DNA of 64,000 nt from Guillardia theta CCMP2712 (taxonomy: Eukaryota; Protista; Cryptophyta): contig NW_005434604.1 of the NCBI RefSeq assembly GCF_000315625.1, forward strand, positions 186,001 to 250,000, written 5' to 3'. A program made the translations under genes and the position numbers. Shown here one piece after another: positions 1-11,274 of the stretch. Position 1 is the stretch's first letter. Each line of letters opens with the position of its first letter. The notes below the pieces were generated by a model that was given only the letters and a program-made list of their open reading frames with translations, did not search any database and was not told where the DNA came from.

Positions 1-1727
1 TAAGAATCATCAGGGTATGAGATTCAGGAACTGAATTGAAATGTCCAGAGAACTTTGCATCCTTGCGAAAGAAGATGATGCAATCTATGCTGCACCACTA
101 TGACAGCAGGGTGAGGGATTTTGTGCTAGGACGGATTAGCTCTCTGACTTTGCCTGTGCTCTTTGCAGGCTGAATCCAGCATGTCGAACATTGGCGACAG
201 TGGAGGTTCGGAGAAGATGGATTTTCCTGCCGCTGACAAGGAGGTGACTGTTTGACTCTCCCATCGTTGGTGATTCAAAACTCATCCTGGTGCTGCGTCT
301 TGAACACAGGATTCACTGTTGAGTAGCGGCAGTAAGAGCGAGAGAGCGGCAAGTTTGATGGACAACAACAAGCGATCAATGCTGCATGACAAGACTGAAG
401 AAAGGAAGCATTCTGTTGACAAGCAACCGTCTCCCACCTGGAAAAGCCTTGCCAAGTCACTGTAAGCAAGGAATCCACACTGAAAGACTACTAACCGCAG
501 TGGCCCTGTTAGCTACGTCAGAAAGTGGAAGCCATCGCATGAAGCAACGCATGCATCAACCAGCATCAAACAAGGAGCGTCATGGTCGGATCTTAGCGCA
601 GAGCTCAAAAATGATATAGATCCGAACGTACGGGTATGTTGCATATTTCGACCCCAAAAAGCGTGTGTTGGCGACTTGAGCATCTTTTGCCATAAGAATT
701 CAAATCACTGTCGCTGATTGATATCTTTTATCAGGAAGAGAGAAAGGATCTTCGAGAAGCGAAGATTCGAGCAGAAAATTACCTCAGTGAGAAGCAAGTG
801 GATCAATCTGCATCAGGCAGAGCCCATGTCACTCAACTAAGTTTGAGAAAGAAAGCGAAAGCAAAGAATGTTGATCTCGAAGATAGCAAGTCAGAGAATC
901 TCAAGCGGCAGATGGCGAATGAGGACAAGCTGAAAGCCAGAAAATATGTCTTGGGGATCATCGCGAAGGACGTCCCCAAGTCATTACAACTTGCCTTCAT
1001 CAATAATTTGGAAAGCAAGCGTAATGATGGACATGGGCAGTCTCTTGCAGCTCTTAACTCGCAGATGCTGAAGCTCAAAGATGAAGTTCGAAGGATGAAA
1101 GACAAGGCACAGATTCTAGAATTGCAGAGCGAGGTACAAAAGTTGGAGCGGCAGCAACATGAAGCGAGCAAGCCCGTATCAAAGATGATGACAGTTGCTG
1201 CAGCAAAGGAGGGTCTGCTGAAGAAAGTGAGATCCATTCTGCAGGCACAATTCAACACTTTGAGAGAGAACATCGAAAATGAAATCAAAACCGTCAGTGC
1301 TTCGGACATTGCGGAAATCATGAGAGAAGGAAATGCAACGTCCCCGTTTTCTGATTCCAATGAGCTTAAGAAGATTGAAGCATTGAAGGGACAGAATGCG
1401 AAGTTAACGTCACTGCCTGCACGTCAAGAAGGCGCAGATACAAGGGCCAAAAGCATTTTGACAAAGTACAAGGCCCTGGTCAAGGAGAATGCTGACTTGA
1501 AAAGTGAGATAACCTCTATCGAGATGAAGCAAAGAGATTCGAAGAATCTTCCGACCAATCAAGACGTTTACAAACTCCGGCATTTGGCCTCGAAGTACAA
1601 ATTGGAAGCGCTCAAGCTCAGGGAGAATAATAGTAAGTTATCTGCCGAAGTCTTCAATTTGCAATCTCGGCAGAATACTCCATCAGCGGCAGCATTAGCG
1701 GCTCAAAAGGATGGCAAGCGCAAGTAA
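1..1727 (+). CDS. 3' part of multi-exon hypothetical coiled-coil protein (begins upstream of window)
   Basis: Long terminal ORF 798-1727 is K/E/L/Q-rich with heptad character; upstream short GT-AG introns (e.g. ~111-168); no recognisable domain. Confidence 0.6.
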
Positions 1728-5169: not shown

Positions 5170-6285
5170 ATGTTGAGGAAGGAGTTCCTCTGTCCTCTTG
5201 TCTTGTTGGTTTACCTCCATCAAGTCTCTTGCTTCTCTCCTCCTCTGTTCCATCAAGTCTCTTGCTTCTCTCCTCCTCCTCTGTCTTCTTGTCTCCCTCG
5301 TGGATCCTTGACTCATCGGCTGAGGAGACCTTGCCGCATGGCGAACGTAAACGATTATGCGAGAATGCCGCCTTCTGAGAGGAGAAGAGCTGATGAGAGC
5401 GATGACAGCATCTTCTATCAAAGCCCTCGTCTTGTTTATCATGCCGATCATGATTGTCTGCAACGTCTCACCGACATATACAAGTCGCTGATTCCTGCCG
5501 ATCGCCGCGTACTGGATCTTGGGTCTTCCTGGGTTTCGCATCTTCCTGATGATGTGGAGTATGCGCAAGTAGTTGGTGTGGGACTGAACGAAGTCGAACT
5601 TAGAAGTAATCACAGACTAGACGAATATTTGGTCTTGGACCTCAACAGCAAGCAGCATCTTCCTTTTGAAGCCGAGAGCTTCGATGCCGTTCTGCTTGCT
5701 TTCACGATCCAGTACCTCACTCATCCTGAGAAGCTCCTGGCAGACATCAGGAGAGTATTAAAAGATGATGGAGTGGTCATTGTCAGCTGGACCAGGCATT
5801 GCTTTCCGACCAAGGCAATCACAGCTTTCCTGGATCGAGATGAGGAGGGCAGGTTAGAGCTTGTGCAGAATCTTCTGGTACATGCAGGTTACGATGTCGA
5901 GGTTCACCGGAGAGCGATTCTGAACCGAGATTTTAAGGGGTCCGACCCTCTCTACGCCTTGTCTGCTCGCAAGAACGCCCTCGGAGGAAGCAGTGCAAGC
6001 GCCCAACCCAACGACGAGCGCCTAGACATGATGGAGCAGGGGGCCGTGAGGGTGCAGCCAGACAGCTCCCTTGTGTGGAGGGAGAGGATCATTGAGCTTG
6101 CTCGAGAGGCTGAGGGCCTGGGCATCCCAATGTCAGCGATGGGCTTGGAGAAGCTGGGGGACAACCCGAGCAAGGAGCAGGTGCAAGAGGCTATGTCACA
6201 CATTCATGCCATCATAGGTTGATTGCTTCTTTGCTAGTCTACATCTGACTTGGCTCTAGCGAGCAGGCTCAGCTCTAACCTCTAG
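5170..6285 (+). CDS. Class I SAM-dependent methyltransferase (Methyltransf_11-like), probably plastid-targeted
   Basis: DESDDSIFYQSPRLVYH, VLDLGSSWVSHLP (motif I), LPFEAESFDAV, RVLKDDG; leader with signal peptide VSC-F; short final intron gives ...IIASRLSSNL* with TAG at 6283-6285. Confidence 0.85.
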
Positions 6286-9200
6286 CGCGAGGAGGAGGAT
6301 CGGAAGCGCATCTTGCTGATCTCAGGAAAGACGCTGTCTCTGCGGGAGACATCCCGGTAGCTGTCCACTATGTTGGTCCCATCGCGATAGCCACTTGCTA
6401 TCGTTCTCTCCCTGTACGGCACCTCCTCCATCATCTCCTCGTTGTACGATTCTTTGCCCGCAAACTTGGCCTTCCTCATCCTCTTTGTGATCCCGACGGA
6501 GAGCTCGTCTGTGCTCGGCACACGGAGCTTAGCGACCGGAGCGCTGGACTGCAACTTCCCTTCCTCATGCCAGACCGCATGAACCTTGTCTCCTGTGCGG
6601 AAGAAACCTCTTCCGTGCGGCCTCCCTCTCTTCCATTGCCCTTCATATCGGCTTCCGTTGGGCCACAGAAACTCTCCCCATCCTTCTCTGCTTCCTAGCA
6701 CGAACTCCCCGTTGTACTTGGATCCATCCTCCCACCACCTCGAGCCTGAGCCATGGAAGCACATCTCCTCCTGCTCCTCCACGTCCCCAACTTCTCCATC
6801 ATAGTAAGACTTGTCCGGAAACGTGAAAGTCCGTCGAGCCTTCTCGTGGGGCTGCATCAGGATGACCGACCCAAACCTGCTCTCAATGTCGTACGCCTCA
6901 CCCCCGTACGCCAGCACTGCAGAGCCATGCTGCTTGTCGTTCAGCCAGTCCCCGTCATACTTGTACAGAGTCCCGTCTTGGTCCCTCCACTTCTGCATCC
7001 CCTTCCCTTCTCTCTTTCCATTCACAAAGTCTCCCTCGTACACGCTCCCGTTCGGCCATGTCAGCTTGCCCCGCCCATGTCGGCATCCCTCCAGGTATTC
7101 GCCTTCGAACTGCATGCCATCAGGAAACTTCTCCTTGCATGTGCCATGCCGTTTCCCATACTTCCACTCGCCCTCGTACACATACCCATCTTCCCCCACG
7201 AAAGTACCCCTCCCGTCTAACTTCCCGTTCTTCCAGCGTCCTCGGTACTCGCTGCCGTTGACAAACTTCATCGTTCTCTCCCCCGTATACCAAAACTGCC
7301 TCCGTTTGTCTGCGTCTCTCTCGCGCGATCGAGACTCGTCGAGCACCTGCATCTTCATCTTCACGCTGTAGTGTCCTACTTTGTTCCAGACTGTGACAAC
7401 CCACGTGCCGAGCTCGCAGTTGCGCAAGGGGCGACCGTAGATCGTTCCGGTCCTCTCCTCCATCTCAAGGCCGTACGGAAGCTGCTTCCAGTACTCCCAA
7501 AACCTGCAAAGCAACGTCAGCAAGCGAGGACAAGCCTCAGGCCTCTCACTCTTCGAACTCGATCTGTCCAGTCCCGTCTTTGTCGATCTGAGCGAGCAGC
7601 CATCGGAACTCTCCCTCAGTCAACTTCTCCCCTAGATCTCTCAGGCAAAGTCGGAACTCGCTGGGATCAAGAGCCCCGCTGTCGTCTTTGTCGAACCTGT
7701 TGAACACCTCTCTAGCTTTCTCAACTTCTCTGGCCACTGTGAATCTCCTCGGAGCAGAGGCGTCGCAGAGCAGCACCTCGTTGTCCTTGATGGACTCGTT
7801 GAGCGAGTAGACGAGGTCAAACTTCATGTAGATCAGTGTTGTCGCCACCTTCGCCACTTCGATGTGAACATCCACTGAGTGTGACCCCACGTAGTTCTTC
7901 CCGGTAACGACGAACCTGACGCTTTCTGTTACCCCTGGCTTTCCGCTAGATGTTGTCTCCCTCGTAGGGGCACCACTGATCGTTCCAGTCTTCTCGTCCA
8001 GCTCTAGACCAGGAGGGAGTGGCGGGTAGACCGTGAAGCTGACACTGCTTCCCTCGAAGGTCAGGGTGTTGTCATAGAACATCTCGCCGCACTCCGACAG
8101 AGTCTCAGGGTCAGCATCGACTCTGCAATAGCACTCGGGGCTATGCAGCTTGTAAATCACGTCCGAGGAGCGATAGCGAAACTGAGACGGAGCGTCTTGA
8201 ACCTCCATGTTAAGCGTGGTGGAGGTTTCTCCTACCGGATTCCATGCTGTGATCACGTACAACCGAAGCTGGGAGGGCAGCAGAGGCACGCCAGTGATGG
8301 ACCCGTCGTTCTCGTTGAGGTGCAGGCCCTTGGGGAGGGCAGAGGAGAAGTACCTGGAGAAGGCGTCGAAGGTGATGGAGTCAGAGCCCTCCAAGAGCAT
8401 GGACGAGAAGATTTCCTCCATGTCAGACTTGGCCAGGCGGATACCAAGAATGCTCAGCATCTCCTTGAACTCTGAGAAGTCCAGAGTGCCGGACTGATCG
8501 TCATCGTAGGAGTCAAAGAGGGTCCGCAAGCGCAGCGGATCGATCCCAACAAGGAACCTCATGCACCCATTCTTCGACTTGGCCGTTCCATTCGTCGCGC
8601 ACTTCATGGGTCGGCAGGCGGTGTTGGTGGCGAGTCTGACCACGTCTTCGACTAACTTGTACCGGAAGTTTGAAGGCGGATCCATCACTTCCATGCTCAC
8701 CTCGCACTCAGTGGAGCCAACCCTGTTGCTCGCTCGAATGACGTAGTCTGTCGCTCCCGCAGACCTCAGGGGAACTCCACTGATGGCGCCTGTTTCTCTG
8801 TCGATCTTCAGTCCCTCAGGAAGCTCGGGGCTCGTGCTGAAGATGAAGGGGTGGGTTCCATTGATGGCCTTCACCTTGAGGGGGCCCTTGATCCAGTCGC
8901 CCTCCTGGTTGACTTTGAAGTGGTCAGCTCCTTCTCTGTGCCCAGAGTACATCTGCTTCGCAATCCTCACAAAGTCGTCGAAGAAGATCTCTTGCTCCTC
9001 TCCGCGATCGCTGTTCGTGGCCTCCCTCATCATGCTGCTCAGGTCTTCCTCGGAAATACGAACCCCCCACGCTTCCAGCGCGTCCCCCATCTCCTTGGCG
9101 TCTACTGACCCGGAGTGATCCGAGTCAATGGCGTCGAACAGCTCCCGGGCTGCTGAGATAAGTCTATTGTCATCCATCCTCTTTCCCAGCTTTGAAATCA

Positions 9201-11274
9201 ACGACGCTCTTGCTGACTTCCACGCGTCCAGCTGCAGCTCTCCCTGCCGGTAGATGACGTTGGTGAAGCAGTACTCCAGCTCCACGGGGGGGTCAAGAGC
9301 TTGGAAGTAGACCTGACAGTGGGCGTGCCCGACATCATTCTGCACGGTGACTGTGTGAAGAACTTTTGCTGAGTCGTGCAGTGGTCTCCCCGCAATAGTT
9401 CCTGTCTCAGTATCGATGGACACTCCCTCAGGAAGCGGAGGGTCGATAGAGAACCTGTGCGGCCTCGTTCCCTTGAGTGTGGCGACTTTGATAGGCTTCA
9501 ACTTCTGTTCCACCGCGCAGAAGACGTCAAGAGATTCGTACTGCAAGTTTGACACGGTCTCTAGTATGGAAAGCTTCAGCACAAACTTAGTCGATCCCAA
9601 ACGATTCATGGCAGTGATGGTCCATAGGCGGCCGTTCAAGTTGGTTTCGTCTATCATCCTTGCCAGTTCATCGTCTTTGATTGTGACACCAACCTTGTTC
9701 AAGGCAACCACCAGCTCATCAATGGATAACTCGCCAGAACCATCTGAATCCATCTCTTGGAAAATTTGATCGAGCCTCTCCCAAAGCTCTTCTTTCTTCA
9801 GGTTTGGACCGATCATTTTCACGATCCCCACCTTCGCACTCTCCCAGACATCATCATTGTTGCCAACGTAGATATTCGTCAGAAGATTTTTCCAGCTTTG
9901 AAAGTCAATTCCTGGATCATTCAATCCCTGATCTATCCCTGCTTCATCCATCATTTCAAGTATCGTCGCTTGCTCCACATCCAGGCCCAAACTGTTCAAC
10001 GCCAGCTCAAGCTCTCCGATGTCTATCTTCCCCGACCCGTCCTCGTCAAACTCGTTGAACACCTCTCTACATCGGATGGGAAGTTCAAGCTCCACGTCTA
10101 GTCCTTCCCCCAACTTCTTGATCAATGCATACCCTGCTTCCTTCCAGGCGCCGTACTTGTCTTTGCTGTGATACATCTTGAACAGCATCTCCTCGAATTC
10201 GAGGATCTCGATCTCAGCACTGCCATCAACGTCTAACTCAGCCGCCATGTGCGTCAACTCTTCGTCAGAAACTTGTATGTGAAGCGAAGTCATCAGAGCC
10301 TTCAGCTCGTCGAAGTCTATCTGCCCGGACCCATCCTCATCGTACTTGTTGAAGATCTCCCTTGCTCGTTCTCGGATCTCTTCTTCTGTCAGGTTCATCC
10401 CTAATTCTTTGAGGAGCGCATTTCTTGCCTTCTTCCATCCGCTGTCGCTGGTTTTGCCCATGTACATCTGCAAGCACAGGTCTCTCCAACCTTGCATGCT
10501 CAGCGAACTTTGCCCTGTAGGGTTCCCACTTATGATCCCCGTGGCCTCATCGAAATGAAGGCCCGGAGGCAGCGGTCGATCGATGCTGAAGTGTATGGGG
10601 GCAGAGCCAGATTCAAGAAGAGGCTCGTTGGGAATGATGTCATGTTCGGATGCGTACTTACACACACCAGCAGTGTATGTCAGCTCTGCCGGCGCGTCCT
10701 CCATCTCCACATGATCGCCAGAAGTCATGGAAACGAACAGGTAGAATTGTCCATACCCCTTGTCGGACGTTCGTTCGCCCGGTGAGAACTGGTCGAGGAA
10801 GCTCGTATGGACTACATTACGAATGGTGGCATCCAGCTTGTCGCCGTTGACGCCGAAGGAGAGCAGGCCAGCATCTACATCGAAGAAGACATCTACCACA
10901 TCGCCTGTTCCCGTCATCCGCTTTTCCTTCTGATCTGACGCCGGGACTTGGCGGCCGCCACTCCGCAAGCATCCGTCGGAATTGCAGTAATGCCAGAGCC
11001 GATCGTTGAAGTACGTGTCCAGCGCTCCCTTCTGCAAGTCAGAGTCCTGTATGTCCACCGCGATCCCGATGCAGAGCGAAGCTGAGGGATTCTTCCTCAC
11101 GATCTTGAGCTGCCATCTGTGCTTCCCTCTTCGTCTGGGAACCTTGGCCAGCACAAGATATTCTCCCTCACAGTCTGGGATGCTTGCAGACTTCCCCTCG
11201 ACCACGGCATGCTCGCGCGACCATCGCCCCCACACATTGCTCTGAATGTGCGCCATGCCACCGAGATCGGACAA
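6282..11274 (-). CDS. ~1640-aa protein: SPRY domain, 6 putative-Ig (He_PIG-like) repeats with inserted EF-hands, C-terminal MORN repeats
   Basis: ORFs 7546-11274 and 6282-7523 join in frame via a 46-nt GT-AG intron (7504-7549: EFEE/FWEYW). SPRY motifs (LCIGIA, GDVVDVFFDVDAGLLSFGVNG); LPxGLxxDxxTGxIxGxP repeats; DxDxSGxIDxxE loops; YxGxWxxGxxxGxG MORN repeats. Confidence 0.88.

What the first reader, a model, noticed from the sequence alone, without database searches (positions are those of the whole stretch)
6282..11274. Ig-repeat rod with EF-hand calcium modules inserted inside four of its six Ig domains, between SPRY and MORN
Seen: six repeats of the pattern P..Y...F...LPxGLxxDxxTGxIxGxP...xVTAxNxVG (He_PIG/cadherin-like Ig, typical of secreted bacterial surface proteins). 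Repeats 2 and 5 have no EF insert. Repeat 1 has a block of ~5-6 EF loops inserted after GNPT, repeat 3 has an EF pair after the first strand (YRQGE), and repeats 4 and 6 have EF pairs just before LPxGL. That is at least three different insertion points. No signal peptide is visible. Established: MORN repeats act in membrane/cytoskeleton attachment and SPRY is an interaction domain. Inference: an intracellular Ca2+-gated extensible or bendable linker, a candidate component of a contractile fibre, flagellar root or ejectisome/periplast system.
Basis: partly seen in the sequence, partly recalled or inferred. Interest (0 to 1): 0.75.

Follow-up and report, generated by a model that had tools for sequence, protein, structure and literature searches.

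The report
Calcium modules nested inside Ig domains
A cryptophyte alga (Guillardia theta) encodes a long rod-shaped intracellular protein whose antibody-like (Ig) domains each fold around complete calcium-binding EF-hand modules inserted in their loops, a natural version of a trick so far seen here only in engineered calcium sensors; what the protein does in the cell is unknown.

Summary
Window 11256..6282 (minus strand) holds one two-exon gene with a 46-nt GT-AG intron. It encodes a protein of about 1,642 aa with no signal peptide or membrane segment.

The layout is SPRY, six He_PIG (cadherin-like Ig) domains, about 10 MORN repeats and a disordered tail. Six EF-hand pairs are nested inside four of the Ig domains, at three different loops:
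- A'-B loop: Ig3.
- C-C' loop: Ig4 and Ig6.
- E-F loop: Ig1, with three tandem pairs.

Four lines of evidence show that the Ig folds close around the inserts:
- AlphaFold models.
- Structural alignments to titin, SraP and a single solved He_PIG-like domain.
- An independent He_PIG profile.
- Collinear orthologues.

The gene is single-copy in Guillardia theta. It is conserved, inserts included, in Teleaulax, Rhodomonas and unnamed metagenomic relatives at about 47% identity. I found it nowhere else.

The public Guillardia model (GUITHDRAFT_75881, 141 aa) is a chimera of two EF pairs from this gene.

Function is inferred, not shown. I favour a Ca2+-responsive strut or tether anchored through SPRY and MORN.

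This is a new variant of known kinds, of moderately high interest.

The parts
6282..11256 (-). Whole gene: ATG at 11256, stop at 6284-6282; protein of about 1,642 aa (1,235 + 1 split codon + 406)
   Evidence: N-terminus and collinearity match the full-length orthologues P0001 and P0257.
7504..7549 (-). 46-nt GT..AG intron. It splits the codon of the twelfth (Glu) residue of the last EF loop.
   Evidence: The junction sequence is confirmed by orthologues.
10702..11256 (-). N-terminal SPRY domain (aa 1-185; Pfam match aa 45-151)
   Evidence: 27.1 bits against a cut-off of 26.3. The Teleaulax orthologue scores 35.4 bits.
10516..10701 (-). Ig1, N-terminal part (strands 1-6, aa 186-247, ends GNPT)
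   Evidence: Pfam He_PIG profile 34-66; own profile 1-60; strands in the model.
9631..10515 (-). Insert in the Ig1 E-F loop: three tandem units, each a W-K-x-A helix plus an EF pair (aa 248-542). The last EF loop runs straight into strand F (NGRLWT).
9559..9630 (-). Ig1, C-terminal part (strands F and G, aa 543-566)
   Evidence: Own profile 64-83; strands at model residues 358-380 with block pLDDT 78-86.
9286..9558 (-). Ig2, uninterrupted He_PIG domain (aa 567-657)
   Evidence: Matches 4ogz_B at Z 11.8, rmsd 2.0, 84 residues aligned.
9238..9285 (-). Ig3, N-terminal part (strands A and A', aa 658-673)
   Evidence: strands 473-477 and 481-485, pLDDT 89-94.
8896..9237 (-). Insert in the Ig3 A'-B loop: one W-K-x-A helix plus an EF pair (aa 674-787)
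8683..8895 (-). Ig3, C-terminal part (strands B-G, aa 788-858)
   Evidence: Pfam He_PIG profile 43-85; own profile 18-84.
8548..8682 (-). Ig4, N-terminal part (strands A-C, aa 859-903)
8341..8547 (-). Insert in the Ig4 C-C' loop: one EF pair (aa 904-972)
   Evidence: Matches a calmodulin lobe (2rob) at Z 10.2, rmsd 2.0.
8194..8340 (-). Ig4, C-terminal part (LPKGL to strand G, aa 973-1021)
   Evidence: Pfam He_PIG profile 46-87.
7849..8193 (-). Ig5 (aa 1022-1136): no EF insert, but short non-EF extensions at the A'-B and E-F loops
7735..7848 (-). Ig6, N-terminal part (aa 1137-1174)
   Evidence: tested on the orthologues P0003 and P0001.
7485..7734 (-). Insert in the Ig6 C-C' loop: one EF pair with two canonical loops. 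It spans the intron (exon-1 aa 1175-1235, the split codon, exon-2 aa 1-6).
7335..7484 (-). Ig6, C-terminal part (LPYGL to strand G, exon-2 aa 7-56)
   Evidence: Pfam He_PIG profile 47-77. In orthologue P0003, 4ogz_B aligns 83 residues at rmsd 1.9 across the insert.
6543..7334 (-). Charged linker helix and MORN repeat array (exon-2 aa 57-320)
   Evidence: MORN, 111.6 bits. The orthologue model matches TbMORN1 6t4r at Z 17.2, rmsd 1.9.
6282..6542 (-). Predicted disordered C-terminal tail with a conserved GYRDGT motif, and the stop codon

Best explanation
SHOWN. This is a real, single-copy, two-exon nuclear gene of Guillardia theta for a cytosolic protein of about 1,642 aa. The layout is an N-terminal SPRY domain, a rod of six cadherin-like (He_PIG) Ig domains, a MORN repeat array and a disordered tail. 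Six complete EF-hand pairs are nested inside Ig1 (three pairs), Ig3, Ig4 and Ig6, at three different inter-strand loops. The beta-sandwiches are predicted to close around them. Eight of the twelve EF loops keep canonical Ca2+ ligands in all four species compared, and the inserts are as conserved as the Ig scaffold.

INFERRED (about 40%). The protein is a Ca2+-responsive strut or tether roughly 25-30 nm long. SPRY and MORN anchor its two ends to partner proteins or a membrane skeleton. By strand order, all three insertion loops (A'-B, C-C', E-F) lie at the C-terminal pole of their domain, next to the junction with the following domain. They are joined to the strands by zero to a few residues. 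Ca2+-driven opening of the EF lobes would therefore act directly on the inter-domain hinges and change the stiffness or bend of the rod. This is the logic of cadherin junction Ca2+ sites, carried out with cytosolic EF-hand sensors, and of engineered sensors with calmodulin inserted into a beta-barrel.
For: Gene model.

Domains: Pfam.

Nested folds, from the models:
- Window aa 186-1025, mean pLDDT 77.8.
- Orthologue P0003, mean pLDDT 71.8.
- Every Ig shows the same eight-strand pattern, with helical inserts between strands 6/7, 2/3 or 4/5.

Nested folds, from structural alignment:
- Titin I67-I69 (2rjm): 259 residues at rmsd 4.5 over model 380..836, which equals the range minus the two inserts.
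- SraP two-module fragment (4m03): 160 of 165 residues over 478..835.
- Titin I65-I70 (3b43): 343 residues over 1..836.
- A single solved He_PIG-like domain (4ogz_B): 83 residues at rmsd 1.9, Z 11.0, over 372..526 of the orthologue, spanning the Ig6 insert.

Independent profile of 2,694 non-family He_PIG domains. Native modules hit it in pieces; with the EF insert removed they give one fuller and higher-scoring hit:
- Ig1: 1-60 plus 64-83 (51.8 bits), becoming 1-83 (64.7 bits).
- Ig3: 65.1 to 74.1 bits.
- Ig4: 45.8 to 49.1 bits.
- Ig6 of P0001: 31.7 to 43.2 bits.

Conservation:
- Inserts sit at identical positions in P0001, Teleaulax P0257 and Rhodomonas-type P0245.
- 38% of insert columns are invariant, against 34% of scaffold columns.
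- The junction motifs NGRLWT and GWRDLC.QMY.G are invariant.

Cytosolic: no signal peptide, and the highest 19-residue hydropathy is 1.2. MORN is an intracellular module.

EF lobes are calmodulin-like.
Against: - No localisation, partner or Ca2+-binding data exist.
- I could not inspect model coordinates. The statement that all inserts sit at the C-terminal pole rests on strand order and standard Ig topology, not on measured distances.
- Four of the six EF pairs keep only one canonical loop.
- pLDDT within the Ig1 EF block is only 50-80.
- The alignments behind the models are shallow (14-19 sequences, one family).
- Nothing shows that Ca2+ changes the rod.
Confidence: 0.4

Rival explanations
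1. Ca2+-dependent docking platform. The rod is a passive spacer. The six EF lobes work like tethered calmodulin or centrin lobes that capture helical motifs of other proteins (or the protein's own W-K-x-A helices) when Ca2+ rises. Rod mechanics do not change.
For: - The EF pairs match calmodulin, centrin, troponin C and alpha-actinin lobes at Z 9-12, rmsd 1.4-2.5.
- Four of the six units carry a conserved amphipathic W-K-x-A...L..K.LG helix just before the EF pair. This could be a built-in ligand.
- SPRY and MORN are also interaction modules.
Against: Simple tethering would not need insertion inside a fold with near-zero linkers, nor three different loop sites. Appending the modules between domains would do. 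The junction residues are invariant, which suggests coupling to the scaffold.
Confidence: 0.3
2. Constitutive structural or buffering role. The EF modules are always Ca2+- or Mg2+-loaded, or are degenerate, and merely stabilise or decorate the rod, or add Ca2+ buffering capacity. There is no switching.
For: - Four of the twelve loops are non-canonical or truncated (EF4, EF6, EF8, EF10).
- EF10 is variable in length and sequence among orthologues.
Against: Eight loops keep the full canonical ligand pattern across sequences only about 47% identical. The inserts are at least as conserved as the scaffold. Cytosolic canonical EF pairs usually act as sensors (established knowledge).
Confidence: 0.15
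3. Secreted or surface adhesin-like protein, as for most bacterial He_PIG repeat proteins, with the EF-hands as extracellular structural Ca2+ sites.
For: The nearest sequence relatives of the Ig repeats are giant bacterial and archaeal He_PIG surface proteins. The structural matches include the SraP adhesin and dystroglycan.
Against: - Guillardia, P0001 and Teleaulax all lack a signal peptide and a membrane segment.
- MORN arrays are intracellular modules.
- The structural matches of the MORN part are axonemal and cytoskeletal proteins.
Confidence: 0.05
4. Gene-model artefact. The EF-hand stretches and the Ig stretches belong to different transcripts or are removed as introns, as the public 141-aa model implies.
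For: The public model GUITHDRAFT_75881 splices aa 287-367 directly to aa 1177-1235.
Against: - The 1,242-codon frame is uninterrupted.
- Transcriptome-derived orthologues are collinear over the full length, for example Teleaulax amphioxeia at 1,689 aa, marked 'ORF type:complete'.
- The region skipped by the public model encodes well-scoring, conserved domains.
Confidence: 0.02

Closest known systems
He_PIG / dystroglycan-type cadherin-like Ig repeats (Pfam PF05345), e.g. bacterial giant surface proteins, SraP cadherin-like modules (PDB 4m03), the BF4189 N-terminal domain (4ogz)
   Same: Same domain family by Pfam score, by an independent profile and by fold (4ogz_B at Z 11-11.8, rmsd 1.9-2.0). 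Same tandem rod arrangement.
   Different: Among the top sequence hits, no protein outside this family combines EF-hand and He_PIG domains. Those relatives are mostly secreted or surface proteins. This one has no signal peptide and is flanked by SPRY and MORN.
Classical cadherin ectodomains
   Same: A rod of cadherin-like beta-sandwiches, with Ca2+ sites placed at the pole facing the next domain. For this protein that placement is inferred from strand order.
   Different: Cadherins bind Ca2+ directly through loop and linker acidic motifs, outside the cell, at millimolar Ca2+. Here whole EF-hand pair domains are inserted, in a cytosolic protein. Pfam Cadherin (PF00028) does not match.
Engineered Ca2+ sensors made by domain insertion: calmodulin or troponin C in fluorescent-protein barrels (NCaMP7 6xw2, icBTnC2 9vsj, NRS 8c0t, RCaMP 3u0k), and a 12-residue EF loop grafted into a de novo Ig domain (PMC9530121)
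   Same: An EF-hand module is inserted in a loop of a beta-structure through very short linkers, so that Ca2+ binding can act on the host fold. These sensors appear among the best structural and sequence matches of the inserts.
   Different: Those are man-made. This one is natural and conserved, and uses three different loops of a small Ig sandwich, with up to three EF pairs in one loop.
Rod-plus-EF-hand cytoskeletal proteins (alpha-actinin, spectrin) and titin-type intracellular Ig rods
   Same: An intracellular elongated scaffold with calmodulin-like lobes. The lobes match Entamoeba alpha-actinin 6sl3 (Z 10.9) and spectrin 8iah (Z 10.8). The Ig tandem superposes on titin I67-I69 (Z 10.1-11.3).
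   Different: In those proteins the EF-hands are appended at an end of a helical rod. Titin Ig domains are I-set and uninterrupted. No sequence relationship was found.
MORN repeat proteins (TbMORN1, radial-spoke RSP1/RSP10, junctophilin, MORN4)
   Same: The C-terminal array matches the MORN fold at Z 13.7-17.2, rmsd 1.9-2.2, and Pfam MORN.
   Different: Among long MORN proteins sharing words with the query, only members of this family also carry He_PIG or EF-hand domains. The score drops from 715 to 326 bits outside the family.

Membership tests
He_PIG (PF05345) cadherin-like Ig domain | Score above Pfam's gathering cut-off | tested here: met
   98.9 bits against a cut-off of 24, in 5 stretches. 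The sixth repeat, in exon 2, scores 17.4 bits on its C-terminal half alone.
He_PIG (PF05345) cadherin-like Ig domain | Complete beta-sandwich fold like solved members | tested here: met
   - Ig2 against 4ogz_B: Z 11.8, rmsd 2.0, 84 residues aligned.
- Ig6 of the orthologue against 4ogz_B: Z 11.0, rmsd 1.9, 83 residues aligned across the EF insert.
- All from predicted models, not experimental structures.
He_PIG (PF05345) cadherin-like Ig domain | Contiguous domain, as in all other members seen | tested here: not met
   Four of the six domains are interrupted at profile positions about 17/18, 34/36 or 60/64 of 84. This is the departure that makes the protein a new variant.
EF-hand pair (PF13499) | Score above the cut-off, and the paired helix-loop-helix fold | tested here: met
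   162.3 bits against a cut-off of 30, in 6 stretches. The lobes match calmodulin, parvalbumin and centrin at Z 9-12, rmsd 1.4-2.5.
EF-hand pair (PF13499) | Canonical 12-residue Ca2+ loop (D-x-[DNS]-x-[DNSG]-G-x-hydrophobic-x-x-x-E) | tested here: met
   Eight of twelve loops (EF1, 2, 3, 5, 7, 9, 11, 12) keep the ligand pattern in nearly every case across the four species. The exceptions are Ala at position 6 of EF2 and small departures in EF3 and EF12 of P0245. EF4, EF6, EF8 and EF10 are non-canonical. Actual Ca2+ binding was not tested.
MORN repeat (PF02493) | Score above the cut-off, and the beta-hairpin array fold | tested here: met
   111.6 bits against a cut-off of 22.5, in 7 stretches. 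The orthologue model matches TbMORN1 at Z 17.2, rmsd 1.9, 143 residues aligned.
SPRY (PF00622) | Score above the cut-off | tested here: met
   27.1 bits against 26.3, which is marginal. The Teleaulax orthologue scores 35.4 bits. The fold was not modelled.
Classical cadherin (PF00028) | Cadherin-repeat sequence profile; the inter-repeat Ca2+ motifs were not examined separately | tested here: not met
   PF00028 is not among the families matched at E <= 0.1. The protein works like cadherins only by analogy.
Calmodulin / centrin (free four-EF-hand sensors) | Stand-alone protein of about 150-170 aa with two lobes | tested here: not met
   The EF pairs are internal parts of a 1,642-aa chain. The public 141-aa 'EF-hand protein' model is a splicing artefact.

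The most novel reading that the evidence does not exclude
A natural Ca2+ switch built by domain insertion. EF-hand lobes nested in the junction-facing loops of cadherin-like Ig domains would convert cytosolic Ca2+ transients into changes of hinge angle, stiffness or unfolding force of a rod about 30 nm long. That would make a Ca2+-controlled nanomechanical element, specific to cryptophytes, of a cortical (periplast), ejectisome-docking or flagellar-root structure. It would be a Ca2+-mechanics principle distinct from centrin/spasmin fibres and from cadherins.
Probability: 0.2. Interest if true: 0.85.

Novelty: new variant of a known kind. Interest (0 to 1): 0.6.

Why it matters
Every domain type here is ordinary. 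The way they are combined is not.
- Complete EF-hand pairs are inserted into three different loops of a small Ig sandwich.
- This happens repeatedly within one protein.
- The arrangement is conserved across cryptophyte genera.

If the EF lobes control the Ig rod, this is nature's counterpart of engineered insertion-type Ca2+ sensors. It would be a new way of coupling Ca2+ to the mechanics of a protein rod. It would interest protein-evolution, protein-design and protist cell-biology researchers.

There is also a practical point. The public Guillardia theta annotation represents this 1,642-aa protein by a 141-aa chimeric 'EF-hand protein'. Proteomic and comparative studies that rely on that annotation miss it.

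Tried and rejected
- Paralogues in the same genome: none. The other hits are generic EF-hands or He_PIG ORFs. The He_PIG ORFs on contigs C21 and C53 were fetched and have no EF-hand.
- Relatives with the same combination elsewhere:
  - Among the top 150 of 14,114 hits in 1.84 billion representatives, only fragments and orthologues of this family combine EF-hand with He_PIG.
  - The list is crowded by giant multi-He_PIG proteins, so small EF-in-Ig proteins could be hidden.
  - P0203, P0085 and P0154 had alignments spanning an insert, but contain no EF-hand.
- An uninterrupted SPRY-He_PIG-MORN ancestor-like form: not found.
- ESM Atlas look-alikes: no usable hit, for the Ig4 module or for the rod.
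Only engineered cases turned up.
- A further 3' exon: rejected. A convergent methyltransferase gene ends 60 bp from the stop codon.
Distances between EF lobes and neighbouring domains could not be measured.
  - Exons were searched by reference.
  - Ig6, which spans the intron, was judged on the natural orthologues P0001 and P0003.
  - The EF-excised test sequences existed only inside the script.
Full report
**Gene model**

The finding lies on the minus strand. A 1,242-codon open frame (7546..11274) and a 413-codon frame (6282..7523) are joined by a 46-nt intron with GT and AG ends at 7549..7504.

- The intron splits the Glu codon that forms position 12 of the last EF loop.
- The first ATG is at 11256 (MAHIQSNVWGRWS...). 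Full-length orthologues start the same way and read straight through the splice junction (IEFDEFWDYWKPLPYGL), so both ends of the intron are confirmed.
- The stop is at 6284-6282. A convergent methyltransferase gene ends 60 bp away, so no further exon is expected.
- The protein has 1,235 aa from exon 1, one split codon and 406 aa from exon 2, about 1,642 aa in all.
Exons were searched by reference, and Ig6, which spans the intron, was judged on natural orthologues.

**Organism and annotation**

The assembly has 87.1 Mb in 669 contigs. A 141-aa public protein, XP_005827063.1 / GUITHDRAFT_75881 of Guillardia theta CCMP2712, matches the locus. That model joins aa 287-367 directly to aa 1177-1235. 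It is therefore a chimera of two EF pairs that skips 809 codons of good coding sequence. The real protein is not represented in the public annotation.

**Domain content**

| Pfam family | Score | Stretches |
|---|---|---|
| SPRY | 27.1 bits, just over the cut-off (35.4 in Teleaulax) | 1 |
| He_PIG | 98.9 bits | 5 |
| EF-hand_7 | 162 bits | 6 |
| MORN | 111.6 bits | 7 |

Six LPxGL..D...G.I.G.P motifs mark six Ig repeats. There is no signal peptide and no hydrophobic segment; the highest 19-residue hydropathy is 1.2.

**Are the EF-hands inside the Ig folds?**

Four independent tests say yes.

1. *Pfam on separate pieces.* The He_PIG profile stops at position 66 of 96 where the Ig1 insert begins. 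It starts at positions 46-47 directly after the Ig4 and Ig6 inserts.

2. *AlphaFold models.* Window aa 186-1025 was modelled at mean pLDDT 77.8, with Ig strands mostly 80-95. The natural orthologue P0003 was modelled at 71.8.
   - Every Ig domain has the same eight-strand pattern, with strands of roughly 5, 5, 5, 5, 3, 3, 11 and 11 residues.
   - The helical inserts fall between strands 6/7 (Ig1), 2/3 (Ig3) and 4/5 (Ig4, Ig6).

3. *Structural alignment against 48,161 solved chains*.

   | Solved chain | Z | Aligned residues | rmsd (Å) | Model range | Note |
   |---|---|---|---|---|---|
   | Titin I67-I69 (2rjm) | 10.1 | 259 | 4.5 | window model 380..836 | exactly the range minus the two inserts |
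   | SraP two cadherin-like modules (4m03) | 10.5 | 160 of 165 | 6.6 | window model 478..835 | Ig3 plus Ig4 |
   | Titin I65-I70 (3b43) | 9.0 | 343 | 7.5 | window model 1..836 | four Ig domains |
   | Single He_PIG-like domain (4ogz_B) | 11.0 | 83 | 1.9 | P0003 model 372..526 | a 155-residue range that contains the Ig6 EF pair |

4. *An independent He_PIG profile.* I built an 84-position profile from 2,694 He_PIG domains of non-family proteins. I then scored each module as it is and with the EF segment removed inside the script.

   | Module | Native: profile positions (bits) | EF removed: profile positions (bits) |
   |---|---|---|
   | Ig1 | 1-60 and 64-83 as two hits (51.8) | 1-83 as one hit (64.7) |
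   | Ig3 | 18-84 (65.1) | 1-84 (74.1) |
   | Ig4 | 34-83 (45.8) | 18-83 (49.1) |
   | Ig6 of P0001 | 2-34 and 36-83 (31.7) | 2-83 (43.2) |

**The inserts**

- Ig1 carries three tandem units of about 100 aa. Each is a conserved amphipathic helix (W-K-x-A...L.K.LG) followed by an EF pair ending in M-Y-x-G. The Ig3 insert is a fourth unit of this type.
- Ig4 and Ig6 carry plain EF pairs at the same loop. In the orthologues both begin with the same R-D-P start, which suggests duplication of an Ig+EF module.
- At least three insertion events are therefore needed.
- Eight of the twelve loops keep canonical ligands in nearly every case across the four species. EF4 and EF8 have extended loops and EF10 is degenerate. 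EF6 is truncated, and its loop runs straight into strand F through an invariant NGRLWT.
- Linkers are zero to a few residues long.
- The inserts are at least as conserved as the scaffold: 38% against 34% invariant columns.
- Ig5 has short non-EF extensions at two of the same loops. These loops are evidently permissive.

**Distribution**

- The gene is single-copy in Guillardia. Other Guillardia He_PIG ORFs have no EF-hand.
- Orthologues at about 40-56% identity, with the inserts at the same positions wherever they cover them, come from:
  - Teleaulax amphioxeia (1,689 aa, complete transcript ORF);
  - Rhodomonas salina;
  - a dozen unnamed metagenome clusters.
- Beyond this family, the hits are either He_PIG-only, EF-only or MORN-only proteins.
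- The limits of these searches are given under Tried and rejected.
- No paper mentions the protein or a natural EF-in-Ig insertion.

**How it probably works (inference)**

In a seven-pass Ig sandwich whose termini lie at opposite poles, the A'-B, C-C' and E-F connections all lie at the C-terminal pole. The rod-like superposition on titin requires that arrangement of the termini. The EF modules should therefore sit at four junctions:
- Ig1/Ig2 (three pairs);
- Ig3/Ig4;
- Ig4/Ig5;
- Ig6/MORN.

With almost no linker, Ca2+-driven opening of a lobe would act on the strands and the hinge. SPRY and MORN are protein-interaction or anchoring modules at the two ends. The MORN part matches TbMORN1, radial-spoke and junctophilin MORN arrays at Z 13.7-17.2.

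My ranking of the readings:
- About 40%: a Ca2+-responsive strut or tether.
- About 30%: a Ca2+-dependent docking platform.
- The remainder: constitutive, extracellular or artefact readings.

Where the protein acts in the cell is unknown.

**Comparison with known systems**

The nearest analogues:
- Cadherins, which place Ca2+ sites at the junctions of cadherin-like domains. They bind it through direct ligands, outside the cell.
- Engineered sensors with calmodulin or troponin C inserted into a beta-barrel. These appear among the best matches of the inserts.
- A designed Ig domain with a grafted 12-residue EF loop (PMC9530121).

The protein is a member of the He_PIG, EF-hand, MORN and SPRY families by their own criteria. 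It departs from the other He_PIG proteins seen here in having interrupted domains.

**Verdict**

This is a new variant of known kinds.

Noticed in passing
window 7552-10398 (minus strand; aa 287-367 and aa 1177-1235 of exon 1): The public Guillardia theta gene model GUITHDRAFT_75881 / XP_005827063.1 (141 aa, 'EF-hand domain-containing protein') is a chimera. It splices one EF pair of Ig1 to the EF pair of Ig6 and skips 809 codons of conserved coding sequence.
   Followed up: yes
window 5170-6222 (+): A convergent neighbour ORF of 350 aa is a class I SAM-dependent methyltransferase (Methyltransf_11, E 6.7e-12). Its stop lies only 60 bp from the stop of the EF/Ig gene.
   Followed up: partly
window 7849-8193 (minus strand; Ig5): Ig5 has no EF-hand. 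It does carry a Cys-containing extension of about 25 aa at the A'-B loop and an extension of about 8 aa at the E-F loop. These are the same two loops that host the EF inserts in Ig3 and Ig1.
   Followed up: partly
window 7504-7549 (minus strand): The only intron of the gene (46 nt) sits inside the codon for the bidentate Glu at position 12 of the last EF loop.
   Followed up: yes
L001:4113-5708 (G000 contig C21) and L002:3349-4692 (contig C53): Guillardia has other ORFs with tandem He_PIG domains and no EF-hand or other Pfam domain. Cryptophytes may hold a small set of He_PIG proteins. I did not check these ORFs for a signal peptide.
   Followed up: partly
P0192 (Picozoa sp. SAG11, 1,109 aa), P0119 (Teleopsis dalmanni, 1,219 aa), P0015 (metagenome, 1,903 aa); also G000:C79:359358-360008: Long proteins made of 10-13 tandem EF-hand pairs resemble the three-unit EF block of Ig1 (about 28-33% identity). 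They may be related to the source of the inserted units.
   Followed up: no
exon-2 aa 370-395 (window about 6318-6395, minus strand): The otherwise disordered C-terminal tail holds a motif conserved in all orthologues (GYRDGT[DN]..[TD]SY...R....[FL]P.I). It is a candidate short linear binding motif.
   Followed up: no
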